Shown: positions 5,616 to 37,857 of the stretch, piece after piece
Position numbering within the stretch: the first letter of the stretch is position 1
How the letters are laid out: every line of letters starts with the position of its first letter
NCBI RefSeq assembly: GCF_000315625.1
Contig: NW_005434647.1
Location: 480,936 to 544,935 of the forward strand
Length of the DNA stretch: 64,000 bases
Direction: 5' to 3'
Source of the DNA: Guillardia theta CCMP2712
Taxonomy: Eukaryota; Protista; Cryptophyta
The notes under the pieces: model-generated
Told to the model about the DNA's origin: nothing
Database searches by the model: none
Seen by the model: the letters and a program-made list of their open reading frames with translations, nothing else
Made by a program: the position numbers and the translations under genes

Positions 5616-8600
5616 ATGGCGATGGGAGGGATGGCAGCAAACATGCTGCTGCTCGCAGCCATGGCGTTGCTGTTGAGTAGTGCACCTTGTTGTGATGCGA
5701 GAGTAAGCAAGGAAGAGTTCGAACATGGTTTTCGGCATGGAGAAAGGCGTTCTGTGGTTGCCAAGAACCTTCCCGGAAGACCTCTCATGATTCACAACCC
5801 CGAAACTTTGCTGCTTCATCATACAGAAGACAGAGCACATGCAAAGCTCAAGACTCGATTCAGACAAGATTCGACCATTGCTCAGCAACAGATTGTGTTT
5901 GAGGAATCAAGCAAGAGTCATTACCTTGTTCGAGTGAAATATCCCGCTCCTCCCGACATGCTCTCTCAGTTGAGGGCCACCAGCGGAGACAAGTTTGTGC
6001 AATACATTCCATACGACACGTATGTGGTTGCTATGGAACCTTCCAGGAAACTTCGTGTTGCGAGCATGAAGCATGTGGAGACGATTTATCACCTCCCGTC
6101 GAGCATGAAGATAGCCAACGACCTTCAGGATTACATGTCGTTGGCGATGAGATCGCTCTCAGCCAAGCAGCCCGAGACAGTCATCAACAGCAACCCCCAG
6201 CACCCTGAGAAGCGAGGGACCCTAGACAACAGCCACAAGAAAGACAAGGGAAACCAGGGAAACTCGAAGTCTCAGACCAAACAAGACAAATATGGACAAG
6301 ACAAATATGGACAAGACAAAGAGAAGGGAGCACCGGCTGGACCTGATGAGAGCGTATTTCTTGAGGCAGCCATCTCAGTTCATCCGGATCAAATGTCTCT
6401 AACCAATATGCTTCAATTGTTGGAAAATGCTTTCAGCACAAGATCGGGCAAGATCGCTCAAGTATGGGCGAAAACGAGCAGCAAGCTGACAATTGAAACA
6501 AACGCACAAAATGTTGGGAAGGTTGTAGAGCATTTGGCAAATCAAGCATCGGTGAAATGGATGGAAAAGAGGTCAGAGTACCGCACTTTGAACAAGTATT
6601 CTTCCTTGATCGTTCAGGGAACCTATCAGTGGCAACCAACCAAAACGAAGCTGGAACAGCTCGGTTTGAACGGAACAGGACAAATAGTGGGCATTGCTGA
6701 CACTGGCATTGATTTTGATTCTTGCTTCTTCTATGACTCCAAGGTTCAGGTCTCTGTGTGTGAGGATTGCTATTTCTACGGTTATTCGTGCAGCAGCATG
6801 TGCCCTGCTCAACCCAGTCACCGTAAGATTTTGTCTTACAACTCTTATCCTCCTCCTCCCCCCTATCCTCAGCCTTATGACTCGTATCATGGTCATGGCA
6901 CGCATGTGTCCGGTATCGTTGCTGGCGCCGCTGGTCCCAACCACACTCTTGCGACTCAGTACAATGGATCAGCTCCAGGAGCGAAGATCGTGTTCGACGA
7001 TGTTTCGAATTTTGAGCCTTACCTCAACTACCTGCCATGGGACCTGAGCTCGAGTATCTATCCCCATGCATACAACAATGGAGCAAGGATTCACTCCAAC
7101 TCATGGGGGGGCTATTCTTATGGATACGACTTCCAGTGCATGGAAACCGATTCATTCATGTACGACCATGATGATTTTCTGGTCGTGTTTGCTGCAGGGA
7201 ATAGCGGTCCTTATCACTTCTCGATTGGCAGTCCAGGGAATGCCAAGAACATTCTGTCGGTAGGATCAAGCTTGAACTCCCGTGAGTCGTACGTGGCGCA
7301 TGGTTATGGTACCTACTTCAACCTCTCCATGCTGCTCTCTGATGGCTCAGACGAGAGGCTGGTTGACATCCTCCCTGCCTCCTTTGGAGCTCCGCTGACC
7401 CCCGACACGGAACCGATCAACGCTCCGCTAGTCGGTCAATACTTTTACAGATGGTGCTATCCGTATGATCCTTGGTGCATGGATATTCAGACTCTGCTGT
7501 GCCTGCCTTATCCGGACTCGAACTCAAGTTGCGCCAAACCGACTTCGTCAAATGCTGAGATCTCAACAAGCTTGTCAGACGTGCATACTGTTGAAAATCT
7601 TGGTAACGTTCAATCAAGCATTCGGCTTCAGGATTATCGGTCTTGTTATGTTGACCCTTGGATGTCAACGACGACATGTTCGTTCTCAATGTATGTCAAC
7701 AGAACATCTGGAGGTGATGTCGATCTTATGATTCAAGTGCCTTTGTCGTACTGGATGGGCAGCAACAGTGTCACTAATGTCAAGGGAATCACTGTTGCTG
7801 GCGACTATGTTCCTATGGACTTCAGTGTGTTAGGCAGTCAGTCATGCGGGCAATCAATCAGTACAACATACAGGATACCGTCACAGGTGTCGGGAACGAT
7901 TCAGATCGTTGTTCAGTATGACCAATCGATGAGGTACTGGTACCCTTGTATGTGGTCTGGTGTCACCTTCACGATGATATCTCATGCCGCCACGTCATGG
8001 GACATCCTGTATGACTCGTCTATCTTTCAAATGTACAACTATTACTATTATTATTACTACTACTATCCTCAGATGTTCATTGATTTGAAAATTGACTTCG
8101 ACTTCTGCGTATTTGGAGAAAATGCAAAAAATCGTACGTATCTGACGGGAGGTTCTGTTGCATTTGCTCATTCCTATGATTTGTCATTCTCGCAGTTTGT
8201 TTTTAACAATGAATATGAGGCATATCCAGTTTTCATGGCGGGAAAGAAAGTTCAAGACAACGGCATTAATGGGTACACTATCTACATCAAGAGTCATCAC
8301 ATGGAAACCTCACATGATCAACAATCGCGAGTCACGCTGTATGAAAATAATAGCATTACTTACTCTGTTGTCAGCCCGGTAACCGATGGAGATGACTCAT
8401 TCTCCTTGTCCGTCCGGCAATGGTACTCTCTTTATTCAGGATCGATCAACATCAACCAGACGGTGACTTTGACAGGCTTCTCTAATCCATTGAGTGATTA
8501 CTTTCGCGGCTTCTTTAAAGGCAACATGGTTGCTTCTCCTTTTATGGGCTATTGCGATGAAGTGCTCATGGCCTGGAATGCTCAGAACATGGGAGCCTCT

Positions 8601-31056: not shown

Positions 31057-32676
31057 ATGCAAGTTCCCATTGTCTCCAACGGGGGACAGGACGGGCCGGG
31101 AGATCAAGTTCAGGATAAGGAGAAGCTGTTCCAGTTGGTTGCTGATCTGTCGAGGGAGGAGACGAGGGAAGCGGTTTGTTTCAGCATGAGGGTACGGGGT
31201 GAAGATTCTGATCCCATCCTCAGGCGCTGCTAGAGCTCTCCAAGAAGAGAGAAGCTTTCCCTGACCTTGCTCCCATTCTCTGGCATTCTTTCGGTAGGAA
31301 CCCCACACCTGCTGTGCTGGTCTCACGTGCTGGGCAGGAACGACAGCGACTCTGCTGCAGGAGATCGTCTGCATCTACCCCTTGCTCACCCCTCCCCAAC
31401 TTACCGCACATGCTTCGAACCGAGTCTGTAACGCTCTCGCCCTGCTTCAGGTCGTTCCCTCCATGACGGGGCTGGAGACGAGTTGACCTGTCTTTCAGTG
31501 TGTGGCATCACACCAAGAGACGCGGACTCTCTTCCTGAAAGCTCACATCCCGCTCTTCTTGTACCCCTTCCTCAACACGGTCTCCAAGACTCGCCCGTTC
31601 GAGTACCTCAGGCTGACGAGGTTGGCGAGGGCGGAGGTTCGACGAGACCGGAGGGTGACTGATGGGACGCAGTCTCGGGGTGATCGGAGCGCTGGTGAAG
31701 ATGGACGACTCCGATGTGATCAACTTCTTGCTGACGACTGAGATCATTCCGCTCTGCCTTCGCATCATGGAGGTGAGAGGAGGGGGTTAGCTTCTTCTGC
31801 TCCATCGGCCTCACTCTCGCTCAGACGGGCAGTGAGCTCTCTAAGACGGTTGCAACTTTCATCGTGCAGAAGATTCTTCTCGACGACATGGGGCTGCAGT
31901 ACATTTGTGCTACTGCTGAGGTATTGCTTCCTCCCTCTCCCTTCTTCACCTTGCGTCCCTCCCCTCCTTTGGGCAAACAAGTTGATTTCAATTCTTTCCA
32001 TTCGTAATGCTCCGTCCATCCTCTTTCTCGTTTCCCCTTGCTTGTGTTGCGTAACATTCTCTCAGCGTTTCTTCGCCGTTGCAAACGTGCTGTCGAGCAT
32101 GGTGAACGGGCTCACCAAGGATCCTTCTGTTCGCCTCCTCAAGCACATCATCCGATGCTACTTGAGGTTGCGACTTGACTTCTCCCATCAGAGCTGAGAA
32201 AACTTGTCAGACTTTCAGAGAACATGAGGGCACGAGACGCGCTGCGCACATGCCTGCCAGGTTTGACATGGGGGGACGTGAGCGTGAGAGTCATTGCGCT
32301 ATGCCAGAGCAACTCAAAGATCCAGCCTTCACCAACTGCCTTCGCGACGACAACAGCACGCGCCGGTGACCTGCTCTCACACTCTCATGATATGACGTCT
32401 CCCTCTCCTTTTGCTTCTCCCTCCCTGTCTCTTCCTTTACTCCCCATCAACCTGTCCATTCATTTTTTTTTGCCCCCCCCCCCCCCACACACTCTCCCCC
32501 CTTTTCCTCCTCCTCCTCCTCCTCCTCCTCCTCCTCCTCCTCCTCCTCCTCCTCCTCCTCCTTTCCCCCAACTCTATTGTTTTTACTCTTCGATCTGACC
32601 CCTTGGCAGTTGGTTGTCGCAGCTTCTCTTCACGGTGGGCAATCCAAACACTCATGAGGCTCAGGTTGAGTTGTGA
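31057..32676 (+). CDS. CNOT9: CCR4-NOT subunit 9 (Rcd1/Caf40)
   Basis: [95 protein letters not shown] and [16 protein letters not shown]. Confidence 0.97.
32506..32561. repeat. (CCT)n microsatellite in the last CNOT9 intron
   Basis: Pure CCT run. Confidence 0.95.
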
Positions 32677-32980
32677 TGCCAAGATTCGAGGAAATGAAGA
32701 GTTTGCTGCAGATGCAAGCTCCAACGCTGTCACATCAGTAGCACTGCGCAGCAGATGCTTCAAATTTGCATGCTGAAGTGAAGGAATTGCTTGTCGATTC
32801 AGACAAATAAAACCTCATCATGTCAAATGCTTGTTCAACGAATTTCATTTATATCTATTTCAGCATTGGTAACCAAAGGAAATGTACAAGCGAGCTCAAG
32901 CAAATGTACAAACAACATTATTAGCAGTCAGCGTCATTTCTCAGTGTCTTCATCATGTAAGAAAGAAACTGCCATAAGCG

Positions 32981-35900
32981 TCAAAACCTCTTGGTTATTA
33001 GTAACACTAGCAGACCTTTTCTCTTCAGGCCCTTGCCAGACCCGCTCGACTCCGTAGACCTGAAGTCGAGTAAGACTTGTTCCAACTCCCGCCGCTCTCT
33101 CGCACTCACTTGATAAGCGACAACACGGCAGCAGCAGCAGGCGTCTCACTAGACCTTCCTCCTGCTCCCTCCTCCTTGTCCTCCTTGGCCCTCAACAGCA
33201 GGGAACCAGCGATCTTGCTCAGAGACGCGTCAAGGTGCTTCACTCGGTTCGCGACCGCATCAATCTTCTCCGAGCGGCTGCCGAAGTCTTCGACGTCTCT
33301 CTTGACTTGCTCCTTGGACGAGACAAACTCCTTGCGCAGCGCATGAAAGTCGAACCCTCTCTGCATCCTGCTGAGCTTCGCCTTTCGCTTCCTCCTCCAC
33401 CACAAGGAGATGATGTTGACAGCGCACTGATGCAACCTCACCCGCGCCGTCTCGCGCCCCAGCACTCCCAGAGCTGTATGCTCGGAAGAGGAGAAGGTGA
33501 TCAGATTCCCCAGGGCCGCGGCTGCGATCGACGTCAGCAAGATGCCGAAGAGCATGGCGATGGCAGCGACGCATCTGCCGAAGTGAGTGGTCGCTATGGT
33601 GCCGTTCCCAGCTCCCGGGGTGATGGTGGTGAAGATGAACCAGCAGGCGTTGAGGAAGTACATGTCGTTGAACTTGTAGTACTCGTCGCCGTTGATCGAC
33701 CAGACCTTGGCCGTCTCGCTCTCACACCTTACGTTCTTCACGTTGGGGAAAAGACACGCGGTCGCTTCTGCATTGCGAAACAGATACCCCCCGACAAAGA
33801 CCACGAAGGTCCACAGGAACGCGAGGTAGTAGATGGCACTCCAGCTGTTGAGCATGCGCTTGAGCACGAAGGAGGTGTCAAACTTGACGCCCGTGAAGGA
33901 GCCGATCGAGTGCTTGCTCGGGATGTCACTCACCATCCAGTCCGCGATCACCCGCCACAACAAGTAAACCCGAATGATGTTCCATGAGCAGAAGACAGTC
34001 TCTGCCTGGTAGAGCACGTAATTGCCCATCGTATTGCTTCCCAGCTCAAACGTCGTGAAAGGCGGCAGGTGGAGGCCGACGACGATCATTTCAACCCACA
34101 GCAGAGGATCGTCGAGCACGTGGGAGACGCTGATGATGTAGTCGAAGTGAGCTCCGTGATGAAGGTGCTTGACGAGTCGCCTGATGAGGACTTGAGTCCA
34201 GTAGATGCGGTAGATGAACACCTGCTACCAGTCAGCAGCAACACATGAGCACAACCAGCCTCTCACCAAGCACCCCACCGTCGATAGAGAGCTCAGCCCC
34301 TTCATCACGTCCATGGCGGGCGTGTGAGGCTCCAGCCCGGCAAAGACCAACTCGTTCTCTACGATTGCAAAGAGAGTGCCGAGCATGCCAAAAAGAGCTG
34401 CAAGCATCCGATTGCGACGTAACAAGTCGTCCACCAATTTGCGATTCTTCTTCCAGTCATGTTTCGCAGGCATGAAATCTTTCATGATTGCTATCAGACT
34501 TGAAAGTTTTCGCTGCATCTGCACGGCCGAGGATCTCCTTCTAAGTCGGTGGTGTTGCGGTTTGGTTTGCGTCTTGGCTTCAGTCTCCATCAAGAGCTCT
34601 TCAATCTCTTCTTGGCACTGAGGTCGATTGCATTCAAGAGGAAAGATCCGGCACTTCAATACATCAGATATCTCACACAGTCGTTTGGTCTTAGCTACGA
34701 TGAGGTCTAGCTTTGATTTCTCTGCCATGCAGTCTTCTGTGTGAACATTGGCTGCATTCTTTGTTGTTTTGAAGATCTGTTTGAGCTGAAACAAAGAATC
34801 TTTCTTGTTTTTCTTGGCGATCCCTTTCCTTGCCATCAACCAAGCCTTGAGGAAAGTAGCGGAGTGTTTCGACAAGTTCTTCCAGGCCTTTTCGCGGGCG
34901 ACCATGAGCATGGCCGACTCTTCTTCAGCTGAGAACTGCAGGCGATGCATGAGAGAGGAGGTCAGCATCGCCACCATCACCAGCCCGATCACCGACGTCA
35001 TGGCCGCCACTATCCTTCCAGCGTGAGTGGTGGAGGTGATGTCTCCGAAGCCAACGGTGGTGGAGGCTTGGAACATGGACCAGAGGGCGTTCTGGAGGTA
35101 GGGGTCGTTCACCTTCGTGAAGTAGTTCGGTTGCCCGCTCAGGGAGCCTGCTCCGAAGTCGATGATCCACCTCTTGGCGTTGTCGTTGCCGCAGTTGGGG
35201 TTCTTGCTGGTTCCAAACTGACAGGCTGTCAGCTCCACAGCTCTGAACCAGTACCCGCTGATGAGCAAGAGAATGAGCCAGAGGATCGCAATGAAGTGAA
35301 CCGCGTATCTGCCGTTAAGCAGCAGTTTGATGGTGAAGGCTGAGTTCAGTTGGATTCTTGTGAAACTCGCGACTGTGTGTCTTCGTGGGAGTTTGCCGAG
35401 CACCCATTCTCGAAAGCAACCCCAGAAGAGGAACACTCTCAACACGTTGATCGCTGCTCCCAGCGTCTCTGCCCGGTACACAAGGAAGTTGTTCCAGTTC
35501 ATCATGGGGATCTCAAACGTCACAAAGGGAGGGATGTGAAAAAGAATAAAGAGCGTTTCTGCCCAGAAGGAGGCGTCCTGGAGGATGCAGCTAGGGGGCA
35601 CATGGATGTCCAGCTCGTGAAGGATTCGAAGATGTCTCAAAATGCGACTGAAGAGCTCATCGAGCCAAAATCGTCGATACAGAAAGCCTGCACAACAACG
35701 AGGTCAGAGAATCACAGGAGAATACCCTTGGAAGAGAGTGTCTCACCTATCGCTATACATGTAAGAATGGTGTTGATAGCCTTGAGAGTGTTGACAAACA
35801 CGTGCTGCGGATCAGTTCCTCGAATGATCAACTCATTCTGGGCGCAGGCAAATATGGCTCCAGTGAATCCGAAGATCGCTGAGTTCAAGTTGCTCCAGTA

Positions 35901-36470
35901 CATCCGGACCTCCACTTTGTCTCTGCTCCGACGCCAATCGGAGACGAATGCTGTTCCCGCACCAGACCCAGCGCTCCACTCACCCAGACTTTGTCGTCTC
36001 GACCCTCGACGACTGACCCCAAGAGCCTTCAGCTTCTCCTGGACTTCCGAATGAAGTTTCATCATGCTGTCCCTGCGCTCCCTGTTTCTTTCTAACTTCT
36101 TGGAGTCTCTTTGCAGCTCGAAATCCAAGTCTTCAGACTCAACTTGGAGTTCATCGTCTTGTACCGTCTCAACGAAAGGATCGTTCGCCGGTAAGTTTGG
36201 ATCTTGAAACGAATTCTCTTTGACAAGCAAGTCATGGTTTCTAGGTGAGAGGACCTGGACAGTGTCATCACTGCTGTTGGACCCATTCGCGGCGCTGGCG
36301 GCTGAGTTTGAAGGGAAGAAAGGAGTGCTCAATCGAGACATCACCCCTCTCGGTGCTGTCCATGTCATTCGCCTTGGACGGTCTGCGCTCTTGTCGTCCT
36401 CCTTGTCACCGCCCTCTGCGTTGCTGACCGCATTGGTACTCATTCGCTTTCCATAGAAGACGGAGGGCAT
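32981..36470 (-). CDS. Tandem two-repeat (2x6TM) SK/KCNN-like potassium channel
   Basis: ORFs 35712-36500, 34225-35640 and 33106-34221 are joined in frame by short introns (e.g. 34222-34266). There are two homologous units, each with an S1 (A..G..G..FA...NEL), HxPPF, a 6TM core, pore and post-S6 basic helix. Pore 1 is STTVGFGD. Confidence 0.85.
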
Positions 36471-37857
36471 CTTGAAAGACTCGTATCCGTTGCTTCGCAA
36501 ATTATGAAAACCAATCGATATGATTTACGAGCAATGGTGGGGTATGAAATCTCATGAATTAGACCTTGCAAAGCTACATGTGAAAAGCAGCAGAGGAATC
36601 AAAATCCTCGACGCCCTCAATGGTATTGAAAATCCGAAAGCTGTTCATGCTGCAATGGTAATCTGATTTGTTTGATGTTCTTCCTGGCCAAATAAGCTTG
36701 ATACAAGTGCTTTCTGAGTCCTTCAGTGTCTTCTTTTACTTCCTATGGATCTCTTCCTTCCCGACTGATTTGTCGTTTGGGCGTCAACCTCTTCTTGCTC
36801 CTGCTCCTATTCGTGCTCCTTTGCATGGTAGCTTCCCTGGCTCTTGGTCAACTTCCCCATTGTTCTTCCCATTCTCCTGCTCCTGCCTCTGAGCCGGTTT
36901 GTCTTCTTCTGCGCCTGCTTCTGCTATGCCACAGGATACTTGCGCTTAAACTCCAACGCTAGGTTTGCTCTGGCTCCTCCAGGACTTGACGTGACTGTTG
37001 CTGCTCTCTCGCGTTTCCCTGGCTGCATCGACTATTACTGACATGGAAGTTATTGCTTGTATAAGTTTTTTAACGCACTGTACCCCCACCAGGAAATCCG
37101 GACCCACCCCTCCTACTCCATGACCTACAACCGAAAGGGCTCGATGGATGGACCCTTCCCAGGGTCCCCAACCCGCAGGCTCTGATGAGTCTGGTGGTAT
37201 CAGCACTACTACACCAGGGGGTACCAGTAGCGCGGCAGTCCTCTATGGCCCTACCTATTCTCCCAAAGGCACTGTACGGTACAGACACGACCTGGCAACG
37301 AGGGTGCTACTTCCGGAGTACCGGTCATTGGTCATAGCAACTACCCCTCAGGGACCCTGGCGATCACGCAATCAGAGCCCCAAGTTTACTAACCCTACCC
37401 CCAGCTGTTACCATACAGGGCCTAGCCTTTTACAATACAGGACCGGGTACTGTAACCTGTGACTACCAGGGTGGCCAACTACCCCCCACCCGTCGGGCAG
37501 GCCGAGTGATGAGAGTAGCCGGGCTCACAGGCTGAAGGCTTTGCAGTTTAAAAATGTTTAGTATACTTAAATAGTTTTACGTGAAATCTTTGTGATGACC
37601 CCCCCCGAGCCCCTCCCAGAGTGGGGTCGCGGTACTCACTGATAGAGACATATGACGGTTGAAAGAAGGGGTACTGAACTGCTGACAGCCCGAAGTAAAG
37701 TGAATTCTCTAAAAGATTCGACCAGGTACTAGAGTACAATTTTATAAGCCAGTATCTCGTTTTTGAATCCTTGTGAGTGCTGCTACCACGGTAAAATACT
37801 CATTCACTCAAAGTTAAGTTAAAAACCAGTAAATACTCGGTTCAACCTACCAACTTC

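What the first reader, a model, noticed from the sequence alone, without database searches (positions are those of the whole stretch)
32981..36470. Tandem 2x6TM SK-like K+ channel with asymmetric selectivity filter
Seen: two homologous channel units in one reading frame. Repeat 1 pore is STTVGFGD (35041-35064). Repeat 2 pore is TTITPGAGNG (33601-33630), lacking TxG[YF]G, though both continue TTH[AF]GR into S6. Both repeats have a Cys-pair turret and a post-S6 basic/Trp helix like the SK calmodulin-binding region. Known: SK/KCNN channels are homotetramers of single 6TM subunits. Inference: a dimer-forming pseudo-tetramer with a half-degenerate filter and altered selectivity, an independent parallel to TPC/K2P duplications.
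Basis: partly seen in the sequence, partly recalled or inferred. Interest (0 to 1): 0.75.

Follow-up and report, generated by a model that had tools for sequence, protein, structure and literature searches.

The report
Tandem SK-like channel, odd second pore
This gene of the alga Guillardia theta fuses two SK/IK-type potassium-channel units into one protein, and the second unit carries a conserved TPGAG loop where nearly all potassium channels have TVGYG; the gene is expressed and under selection, but nobody has measured what it conducts.

Summary
A five-exon minus-strand gene (CDS 36470-32934, 1,111 codons) is spliced into one mRNA in three studies. It encodes two homologous 6TM channel units, 31% identical (E 2e-58).

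Both units belong to the SK/IK (KCa2/KCa3.1) lineage:
- A family profile hits only SK2/IK structures at E about 1e-32; the next family reaches 1e-17.
- Foldseek's top 18-20 hits for two AlphaFold models are all KCa2.2/KCa3.1.

Unit 1 has TTVGFGD. Unit 2 has TPGAGN, which the model (pLDDT 90.9) places in register with TVGYGD, so the two glycines are kept.

Unit 2 is not decaying. dN/dS is 0.047, against 0.037 for unit 1, and P-G-x-G is present in all ten cluster representatives of its clade.

The tandem layout is not unique to this gene. It is a cryptophyte family with several Guillardia paralogues, most with canonical filters in both units, and the duplication predates those paralogues.

The scan found a paralogue with a PGxGG loop before, on other DNA of this genome (s1-432795). 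Tandem 6TM Kv-like and CNBD channels are published; I found no paper on a tandem SK-type channel.

Dimer assembly, calmodulin gating and altered selectivity remain inferences.

The parts
35747..36470 (-). CDS exon 1: ATG at 36470, a probably disordered N-terminus, the WRRxRD motif, S1 and the first half of S2 of unit 1
   Evidence: The ORF is. The splice joint is seen in transcript contigs. The translation has no stop. Divergence from relative L004 is 12% upstream of 36470 and 3.2% inside the exon.
35688..35746 (-). Intron 1 (59 nt, GT..AG), inside S2 of unit 1
34267..35687 (-). CDS exon 2: unit 1 from S2 to S6 with its post-S6 helices, the inter-unit linker, and S1 plus the start of S2 of unit 2
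35041..35064 (-). Unit 1 selectivity filter, STTVGFGD (canonical)
35191..35223 (-). Unit 1 turret Cys pair
   Evidence: The homologous columns are nearly invariant in 47 units.
34222..34266 (-). Intron 2 (45 nt, GT..AG, holds an in-frame TAG), inside S2 of unit 2. It lies one nucleotide from the position homologous to intron 1.
33110..34221 (-). CDS exon 3: unit 2 from S2 to S6, the HA-like helix and a long C-terminal helix
   Evidence: AlphaFold model with pLDDT 90.9.
33601..33630 (-). Unit 2 filter region, TTITPGAGNG. T201-P202-G203-A204-G205-N206 of exon 3 takes the place of TVGYGD.
   Evidence: The sequence is identical in relative L004.
33724..33756 (-). Unit 2 turret Cys pair (C156 and C166 of exon 3)
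33388..33489 (-). Unit 2 post-S6 helix (residues 245-278 of exon 3), Trp/basic. It aligns with the calmodulin-binding helix HA of SK2.
33060..33109 (-). Intron 3 (50 nt, GT..AG). It removes the apparent stop TGA at 33108-33106.
33016..33059 (-). CDS exon 4 (44 nt)
32969..33015 (-). Intron 4 (47 nt, GT..AG)
   Evidence: (also seen in 4 raw RNA reads of X18).
32934..32968 (-). CDS exon 5, ending in the stop TGA at 32936-32934
32828..32933 (-). 3' UTR, up to the poly(A) site near 32828
   Evidence: Poly-T loose ends in raw RNA reads at 32828.

Best explanation
This is an intact, expressed nuclear gene of Guillardia theta for a 1,111-residue protein made of two SK/IK-type (KCa2/KCa3.1-like) 6TM channel units in tandem. 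Each unit has S1-S6, a weakly charged S4, a two-helix S4-S5 linker, a turret with a Cys pair, a pore helix, and a post-S6 Trp/basic helix that aligns with the calmodulin-binding HA helix of SK2. Shown here: one mRNA and one reading frame; SK/IK kinship; purifying selection on both units; a unit 2 pore loop T-P-G-A-G-N in the structural register of T-V-G-Y-G-D; and P-G-x-G fixed in a whole clade. Inferred: two chains dimerise, as in K2P and TPC channels, so that four pore loops alternate P1-P2-P1-P2 around one pore. Opening is probably driven by Ca2+-calmodulin, as in SK/IK. The P2 loop keeps the two glycines, and Pro and Ala sit where the canonical residues have ordinary backbone angles, so its carbonyls can probably still line the pore. 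It lacks the aromatic residue and the Asp that brace a canonical filter. The most likely result is a K+-permeable pore with weaker selectivity or different filter gating. The tandem layout arose once, before the cryptophyte paralogues diverged. The PGxG loop is a later change in one subclade.
For: Transcript and frame: spliced contigs from three studies bridge both units, and all four introns are GT..AG. An intronless single ORF covers both units in an environmental relative, P0160. Repeat homology: E 2e-58 and E 4e-13. SK/IK kinship: a profile of 47 units hits KCa2.2/KCa3.1 at E 1e-32 to 1e-30 over S1 to HA/HB, while the next families are TOK at 1e-17 and KcsA at 1e-14. Pfam SK_channel passes its cut-off in tandem relatives P0008 and P0009, and 21 of 47 units match at E <= 0.1. 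Foldseek's top 18-20 hits for both models are all KCa2.2/KCa3.1. Fold: the unit 2 model has pLDDT 90.9, with the pore helix ending at I200 and a loop at 201-212. The same one-residue shift appears in the P0160 model. Selection: dN/dS is 0.037 for the unit 1 core and 0.047 for the unit 2 core against a relative with 94.8% DNA identity, and introns diverge by 4-15% against about 3% in the three large exons. P-G-x-G is present in all 10 representatives of the clade, and that clade has 99% support. Age of the duplication: unit 1 and unit 2 of this gene and of P0007 and P0010 fall in separate clades with 98% and 97% support; unit 1 of P0009 joins the unit 1 clade, but its unit 2 falls outside the unit 2 clade.
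Against: Pfam SK_channel does not reach its cut-off on this gene's own pieces (11.8 bits against 31.8). Pfam CaMBD matches no family member, so calmodulin binding rests only on alignment of the HA helix. No oligomer model could be made. The full tandem model has a pTM of only 0.60 and its coordinates cannot be inspected, so the dimer arrangement is an analogy. AlphaFold cannot predict ion selectivity. Within the clade, the Thr before Pro is replaced by I, Q, M or F in other members, so the innermost K+ site may not be conserved.
Confidence: 0.7

Rival explanations
1. Unit 2 is a decaying or purely structural pseudo-repeat whose pore loop has lost function. The protein relies on unit 1 alone, or does not conduct.
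For: The unit 2 loop lacks the aromatic residue and the Asp of TVGYGD. Its Ion_trans_2 score is lower than that of unit 1 (25.6 against 36.2 bits).
Against: dN/dS of the unit 2 core is 0.047, as low as unit 1. P-G-x-G is fixed in 10 of 10 clade representatives that are only 41-48% identical overall. The loop is modelled with confidence (block pLDDT 86 within a 90.9 model) in the canonical register.
Confidence: 0.07
2. The two units are separate genes or transcripts joined by assembly, or are used separately from an internal promoter.
For: Contigs cannot prove that every molecule is full length. The raw RNA run X18 covers only the 3' end.
Against: Unit 1 and S1 of unit 2 lie in one exon with no stop. 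Intron 2 splits S2 of unit 2, so unit 2 cannot start after the linker without losing S1. Spliced contigs from three studies span the whole gene. More than ten relatives carry both units in one ORF, some of them intronless.
Confidence: 0.03
3. The architecture is as described, but the mixed filter makes it a Ca2+-activated non-selective cation or Ca2+-permeable channel that depolarises the cell, rather than a K+ channel.
For: From established knowledge of Shaker mutagenesis and of NaK and HCN filters (recalled from memory, not tested here), loss of the filter Tyr/Phe or of the Asp usually lowers K+ selectivity. The same genome holds an SK-like gene with a NaK-like TTGDG filter, according to an unchecked scan note.
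Against: Two of the four loops are canonical. The variant loop keeps both glycines in register. K2P channels tolerate GLG or GFG in one loop and remain K+ selective (PMC13715775, read).
Confidence: 0.3
4. The protein does not form homodimers. It pairs with other tandem paralogues or with single-unit SK-like subunits, so that the PGxG loop occurs once per pore or in other combinations.
For: Guillardia has several tandem paralogues: GUITHDRAFT_106691, GUITHDRAFT_149535 and the gene in s1-432795. Many apparently single-unit relatives exist, although a good number may be fragments.
Against: Nothing found here argues against it. Homodimers are simply the simplest case.
Confidence: 0.2

Closest known systems
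Animal SK/IK channels (KCa2.1-2.3 and KCa3.1; e.g. PDB 8v2g, 6cnm)
   Same: Each unit is 6TM. It has a weakly charged S4 (R-x-Y-L-x-x-R), a two-helix S4-S5 linker, a pore helix and S6, followed by a Trp-containing HA-like helix. These structures are by far the best sequence-profile and fold matches.
   Different: There are two units in one chain instead of four separate subunits. An extra 30-40 residue turret carries a Cys pair. No Pfam CaMBD match was found. Unit 2 has TPGAG instead of [ST]IGYG. Identity to the animal channels is only 15-20%.
[quoted passage not shown] 2020, PMC7576140), and the 12TM/2P channels noted in Paramecium (PMC2234077)
   Same: Two 6TM-P repeats in one polypeptide. 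First and second repeats form separate clades and are about 30% identical, which points to an old duplication followed by specialisation.
   Different: Those belong to the Kv-like and CNBD families and have TVGYG-like filters in both repeats. This gene is in the SK/IK family, in cryptophytes (that paper mentions neither cryptophytes nor Guillardia), and has a clade-wide non-canonical second filter.
K2P (4TM/2P), fungal TOK (8TM/2P) and TPC (2x6TM) channels
   Same: Two pore-forming repeats per chain, expected to dimerise into a pseudo-tetramer. As in K2P channels, the second loop is free to diverge.
   Different: No specific sequence or fold kinship. TOK reaches E 1e-17 on the pore only, and no TPC appears among the listed hits (best 60 and top 50). 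The topology differs from K2P and TOK, and the ion-selectivity chemistry differs from TPC.
Guillardia paralogues: GUITHDRAFT_106691 (P0009), GUITHDRAFT_149535 (P0002) and the gene of earlier scan finding s1-432795
   Same: The same tandem SK-like family. Unit 1 of this gene groups with unit 1 of P0002 and P0009 in the tree; unit 2 of P0009 falls outside the unit 2 clade of this gene, and P0002 has no unit 2 in the tree. s1-432795 is reported to carry a PGxGG second loop.
   Different: P0009 has TTIGYGD and TTVGYGE. P0002 has an N-terminal SAM domain and is cut off by the end of its scaffold. The window's gene has TPGAGN and is 41% identical to P0002 over exon 2.

Membership tests
SK/IK (KCNN, KCa2/KCa3.1) channels | Specific sequence kinship to KCa2/KCa3.1 over S1-S6 and the proximal C-terminus | tested here: met
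   The profile of 47 units (A4) gives E 9.5e-33 to 8.5e-30 for SK2/IK chains, covering model positions 5-366. The next family is at 1e-17. The single exons already rank SK/IK among the best PDB hits.
SK/IK (KCNN, KCa2/KCa3.1) channels | Pfam SK_channel (PF03530) above its gathering score | tested here: not met
   The window's own pieces score 11.8 bits against a cut-off of 31.8. It is met in tandem relatives P0008 (36.0) and P0009 (35.4), and 21 of 47 units match at E <= 0.1.
SK/IK (KCNN, KCa2/KCa3.1) channels | Fold: 6TM with a two-helix S4-S5 linker and a long post-S6 helix | tested here: met
   The unit 2 model (pLDDT 90.9) has helices at 103-110 and 116-124 between S4 and S5, and a post-S6 helix at 245-278. 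Foldseek's top 18-20 hits are all KCa2.2/KCa3.1.
SK/IK (KCNN, KCa2/KCa3.1) channels | Calmodulin-binding domain (Pfam CaMBD PF02888) and Ca2+-calmodulin gating | tested here: inconclusive
   No CaMBD match in the window's pieces or in any of 47 units or 9 full-length relatives. The post-S6 helix does align with SK2 helix HA, including the Trp. Binding and gating cannot be tested with these tools.
SK/IK (KCNN, KCa2/KCa3.1) channels | One 6TM unit per chain, forming a homotetramer | tested here: not met
   There are two units in one ORF and one mRNA.
SK/IK (KCNN, KCa2/KCa3.1) channels | Canonical G[YF]G filter in every pore loop | tested here: not met
   Unit 1 has TTVGFGD. Unit 2 has TPGAGN.
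Two-repeat tandem 6TM K+ channels (PMC7576140) | Two 6TM-P repeats in one chain, with first and second repeats in separate clades | tested here: met
   Domain table and unit tree.
Two-repeat tandem 6TM K+ channels (PMC7576140) | Membership of the Kv-like or CNBD clusters | tested here: not met
   KCNQ and Kv chains reach only E about 1e-12 on the pore, against 1e-32 for SK/IK. No CNBD domain was found.
K2P / TPC | 4TM/2P topology (K2P), or kinship to TPC | tested here: not met
   The model shows 12 TM helices. No TPC is listed among the hits, and the best K2P chain reaches only E 1.3e-11 on the pore.

The most novel reading that the evidence does not exclude
Cryptophytes have a natural potassium-channel-type pore built from two different filter loops, TVG[YF]GD and xPG[AG]G, alternating around the axis. 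This two-fold filter would give a selectivity or gating behaviour not seen in four-fold K+ channels, for example a Ca2+/calmodulin-gated cation conductance that helps shape the alga's Ca2+-dependent escape or phototactic responses.
Probability: 0.3. Interest if true: 0.75.

Novelty: new variant of a known kind. Interest (0 to 1): 0.6.

Why it matters
Textbook classes of K+ channels are 2TM/1P, 4TM/2P, 6TM/1P and 8TM/2P, and SK/IK channels are taken to be strict tetramers. This gene shows that the SK/IK lineage also produced a 12TM/2P form. That form is old, has several paralogues and is expressed in cryptophytes. In one clade, evolution has fixed a Pro-Gly-x-Gly loop opposite a canonical loop. 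This is a ready-made natural experiment on how much of the TVGYG signature a K+ pore needs on each of its four walls. Until now that question has been addressed mainly with engineered concatemers. It also adds a candidate Ca2+-activated conductance to an alga already used as a source of optogenetic channels.

Tried and rejected
Word-index protein searches with exon 2, unit 2 of P0001 and unit 2 of P0160 returned only 2-4 relatives each. The exhaustive profile search was needed to see the family.

The paralogue GUITHDRAFT_149535 could not be read through unit 2, because its scaffold ends just after S1 of unit 2.

Pfam CaMBD gave no match anywhere.

Literature searches for tandem or 12TM SK-type channels, or for Guillardia K+ channels, found nothing specific. 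They did turn up the Paramecium remark and the tandem Kv-like/CNBD paper.

My first unit tree used a wrong frame for exon 2. I discarded it and rebuilt the tree.

The full tandem model (pTM 0.60) cannot show how the two units pack, because coordinates are not returned. No multimer job exists, so the dimer idea was not tested.

The joined 1,111-residue spliced protein was never sent to a search or fold tool. Exons were handled one by one, and stored relatives P0001 and P0160 stood in for full-length chains.

No other channel-like ORF lies in the window.

Taxon names could be obtained for only a minority of relatives, and all of those are cryptophytes. The range outside cryptophytes is therefore open.
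Full report
**Source and gene model**

Earlier notes of this scan name the genome as Guillardia theta. This fits the closest named relatives, which are G. theta paralogues.

On the minus strand, three long ORFs (36500-35712, 35640-34225, 34221-33106) carry channel-like sequence. Transcript contigs from three different studies (runs X1, X2, X7) were laid on 32400-37000. They cover the whole gene and skip four short stretches. With the stated offsets these are introns 35746-35688, 34266-34222, 33109-33060 and 33015-32969, and all are GT..AG.

The third intron removes the TGA at 33108-33106. The CDS is therefore five exons:
- 36470-35747
- 35687-34267
- 34221-33110
- 33059-33016
- 32968-32934

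Together they make 1,111 codons, and each exon is free of stops in its frame.

Raw RNA reads from a 3'-biased library show intron 4 and a poly(A) site near 32828. Against a relative with 94.8% DNA identity (L004), the region upstream of 36470 diverges by 12% and exon 1 by 3.2%. This supports 36470 as the start.

I did not send the joined protein to any search or fold tool. Exons were used one by one, and the stored relatives P0001 (98% identical, intron 2 read through) and P0160 (a full tandem relative) stood in for longer chains.

**Check of the observation**

The two units are clearly homologous:
- S2 to post-S6: 31% identity over 324 residues, E 2e-58.
- S1 segments: E 4e-13.

Both units have Ion_trans_2 above the Pfam cut-off. 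The turret Cys pair is nearly invariant in 47 units of the family. The post-S6 Trp/basic helix aligns with helix HA of human SK2. No other channel-like ORF lies in the window.

**Is it SK-like?**

Yes at the level of lineage, with caveats.

- Sequence: single exons already rank KCa3.1/KCa2.2 among the best solved structures, at E about 1e-5. A profile of 47 units gives E 1e-32 to 1e-30 for every SK2 and IK entry, aligned from before S1 to the start of HB. The next families are TOK at 1e-17, KcsA at 1e-14 and KCNQ at 1e-12.
- Fold: the AlphaFold model of the window's exon 3 has pLDDT 90.9 and pTM 0.77. It shows S2-S4, two short helices between S4 and S5 (the SK-type S45A/S45B linker), S5, a structured turret, the pore helix, S6 and a long post-S6 helix. 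Foldseek's top 18 hits are all KCa2.2/KCa3.1, with KCNQ following at E >= 3e-3. The full tandem model of P0160 (pLDDT 69.7, pTM 0.60) gives the same ranking.
- Caveats: Pfam SK_channel is below its cut-off on the window's own pieces, although it passes in relatives P0008 and P0009 and is seen in 21 of 47 units at E <= 0.1. Pfam CaMBD is never matched. Calmodulin gating is therefore an inference from the conserved HA helix and S4-S5 linker.

**The second filter**

An ungapped sequence alignment puts TPGAGNG opposite TTVGFGD. The models tell a different story.

In unit 2 the pore helix ends one residue earlier, at I200 of exon 3, and the loop is one residue longer (201-212). In P0160 the unit 1 pore helix is 306-318 with a loop at 319-329, while the unit 2 pore helix is 829-840 with a loop at 841-852.

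In that register T-P-G-A-G-N stands for T-V-G-Y-G-D. Both glycines are kept. Pro and Ala fall on the two positions that, to my knowledge of KcsA (recalled from memory, not tested here), have ordinary right-handed backbone angles. The loop is thus a variant K+ filter, not a wreck. What it lacks is the aromatic residue and the Asp that brace a canonical filter.

**Selection and conservation**

Against L004, dN/dS is 0.037 for the unit 1 core and 0.047 for the unit 2 core. The filter codons encode an identical peptide. Introns and UTRs diverge by 4-15%, against about 3% in the three large exons.

The exhaustive profile search found 1,036 relatives, 101 of them at E < 1e-30. Ten cluster representatives carry x-P-G-[AGS]-G-[GNA] in the second loop: P0001, P0003/P0160, P0005, P0013, P0014, P0037, P0038, P0053, P0057 and P0085. 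The five complete ones form a clade with 99% support, although they are only 41-48% identical to the window's unit 2.

**The tandem family**

At least ten further representatives hold two units in one chain: P0006-P0012, P0015, P0022 and P0023. Most have canonical T-x-G-Y-G-D in both units.

Named members are all cryptophytes:
- Guillardia theta (GUITHDRAFT_106691 and GUITHDRAFT_149535)
- Hanusia phi
- Hemiselmis tepida and H. rufescens
- Teleaulax amphioxeia
- Rhodomonas salina
- Proteomonas sulcata

In the unit tree, unit 1 of this gene groups with unit 1 of P0160 and P0002 (97%), inside a unit 1 clade that includes P0007, P0009 and P0010 (98%). Unit 2 sits in a separate clade with unit 2 of P0007 and P0010 (97%). 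Unit 2 of P0009 falls outside that clade. The duplication is therefore older than most of these paralogues, and the PGxG loop is a later change.

Other members show different asymmetries: P0012 unit 2 has TTVGFTT, P0017 has STKGNNG, and P0009 unit 2 has TTVGYGE. This is what one expects once two loops in one chain are free to diverge, as in K2P channels.

P0160 lies on a 3.2-kb contig as one uninterrupted ORF through both units. This is independent support for the fusion.

**Mechanism**

Shown: one chain carries two complete SK/IK-type units, each with its own gating linker and HA-like helix.

Inferred: by analogy with K2P and TPC channels, two chains form one pore with P1 and P2 alternating. 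Ca2+-calmodulin on the HA helices and S4-S5 linkers opens it. The mixed filter conducts K+, but with changed selectivity or filter stability. I put about 0.7 on this whole picture. The architecture is near certain, and the selectivity claim is about even.

**What is known**

- A 2005 review remarks that 12TM two-pore-domain K+ channels exist in the Paramecium genome, citing unpublished data (PMC2234077).
- Pozdnyakov et al. 2020 describe two-repeat tandem Kv-like and CNBD channels in dinoflagellates, oomycetes and chlorarachniophytes, with TVGYG-like filters. The paper does not mention cryptophytes, and it mentions calcium-activated channels only once (PMC7576140).
- A 2026 paper on a viral K2P channel stresses that the origin of tandem K+ channels is open (PMC13715775).
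- Six literature searches found nothing on tandem SK-type channels. The Guillardia proteins are annotated only as hypothetical or 'potassium channel domain-containing'.
- This scan has already reported a paralogue with a PGxGG loop on another piece of the same genome (s1-432795). The present gene is a second member of that clade in Guillardia.

**Verdict**

This is a new variant of known kinds: the SK/IK lineage combined with the tandem 6TM architecture, with a conserved unorthodox second filter. It is worth an electrophysiology experiment, and it is not categorically new.

Noticed in passing
window 35688-35746 and 34222-34266: Introns 1 and 2 interrupt S2 of unit 1 and S2 of unit 2 at homologous places that differ by a single nucleotide (phase 1 against phase 0). 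This suggests the intron predates the internal duplication. The unit 2 intron position also seems to be shared by the paralogue GUITHDRAFT_149535, whose gene model runs into it (L001, about 8390-8400).
   Followed up: partly
window 32609-32827 (+ strand): A convergent plus-strand gene has a GT..AG intron at 32662-32708. Its transcript ends near 32827, tail to tail with the channel gene's poly(A) site near 32828 (one contig of the channel transcript reaches down to 32804). Two of three assemblies merge the two transcripts into one contig.
   Followed up: no
window about 32400-32570: A long CCT/CTC-type simple repeat reads as poly-Pro, poly-Leu or poly-Arg depending on the frame. The reads tool skipped it as a repeat.
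   Followed up: no
L004 (ENA metagenome contig, 4,469 nt) against window 37028-32606: An environmental contig is 94.8% identical in DNA over the whole gene, introns included, so a close relative of G. theta is present in that sample. Its intron 2 lacks the in-frame stop, so a prokaryote-style gene caller read through it and produced P0001.
   Followed up: partly
P0012, P0017, P0011, P0009 (relatives): Other members of the tandem family show different one-sided filter changes: TTVGFTT, STKGNNG, TIGFGESG and TTVGYGE. Filter asymmetry therefore seems to have arisen repeatedly in this family.
   Followed up: no
L001 5395-8400 (GUITHDRAFT_149535): This paralogue has an N-terminal SAM domain (by its UniRef name) in front of unit 1, and a long low-complexity intron region. 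Its scaffold ends just after S1 of unit 2, so the database protein is truncated.
   Followed up: partly
window 36471-37040: Transcript contigs run about 570 nt upstream of the ATG without splicing. This is either a long 5' UTR or a merge with a neighbouring transcript.
   Followed up: no
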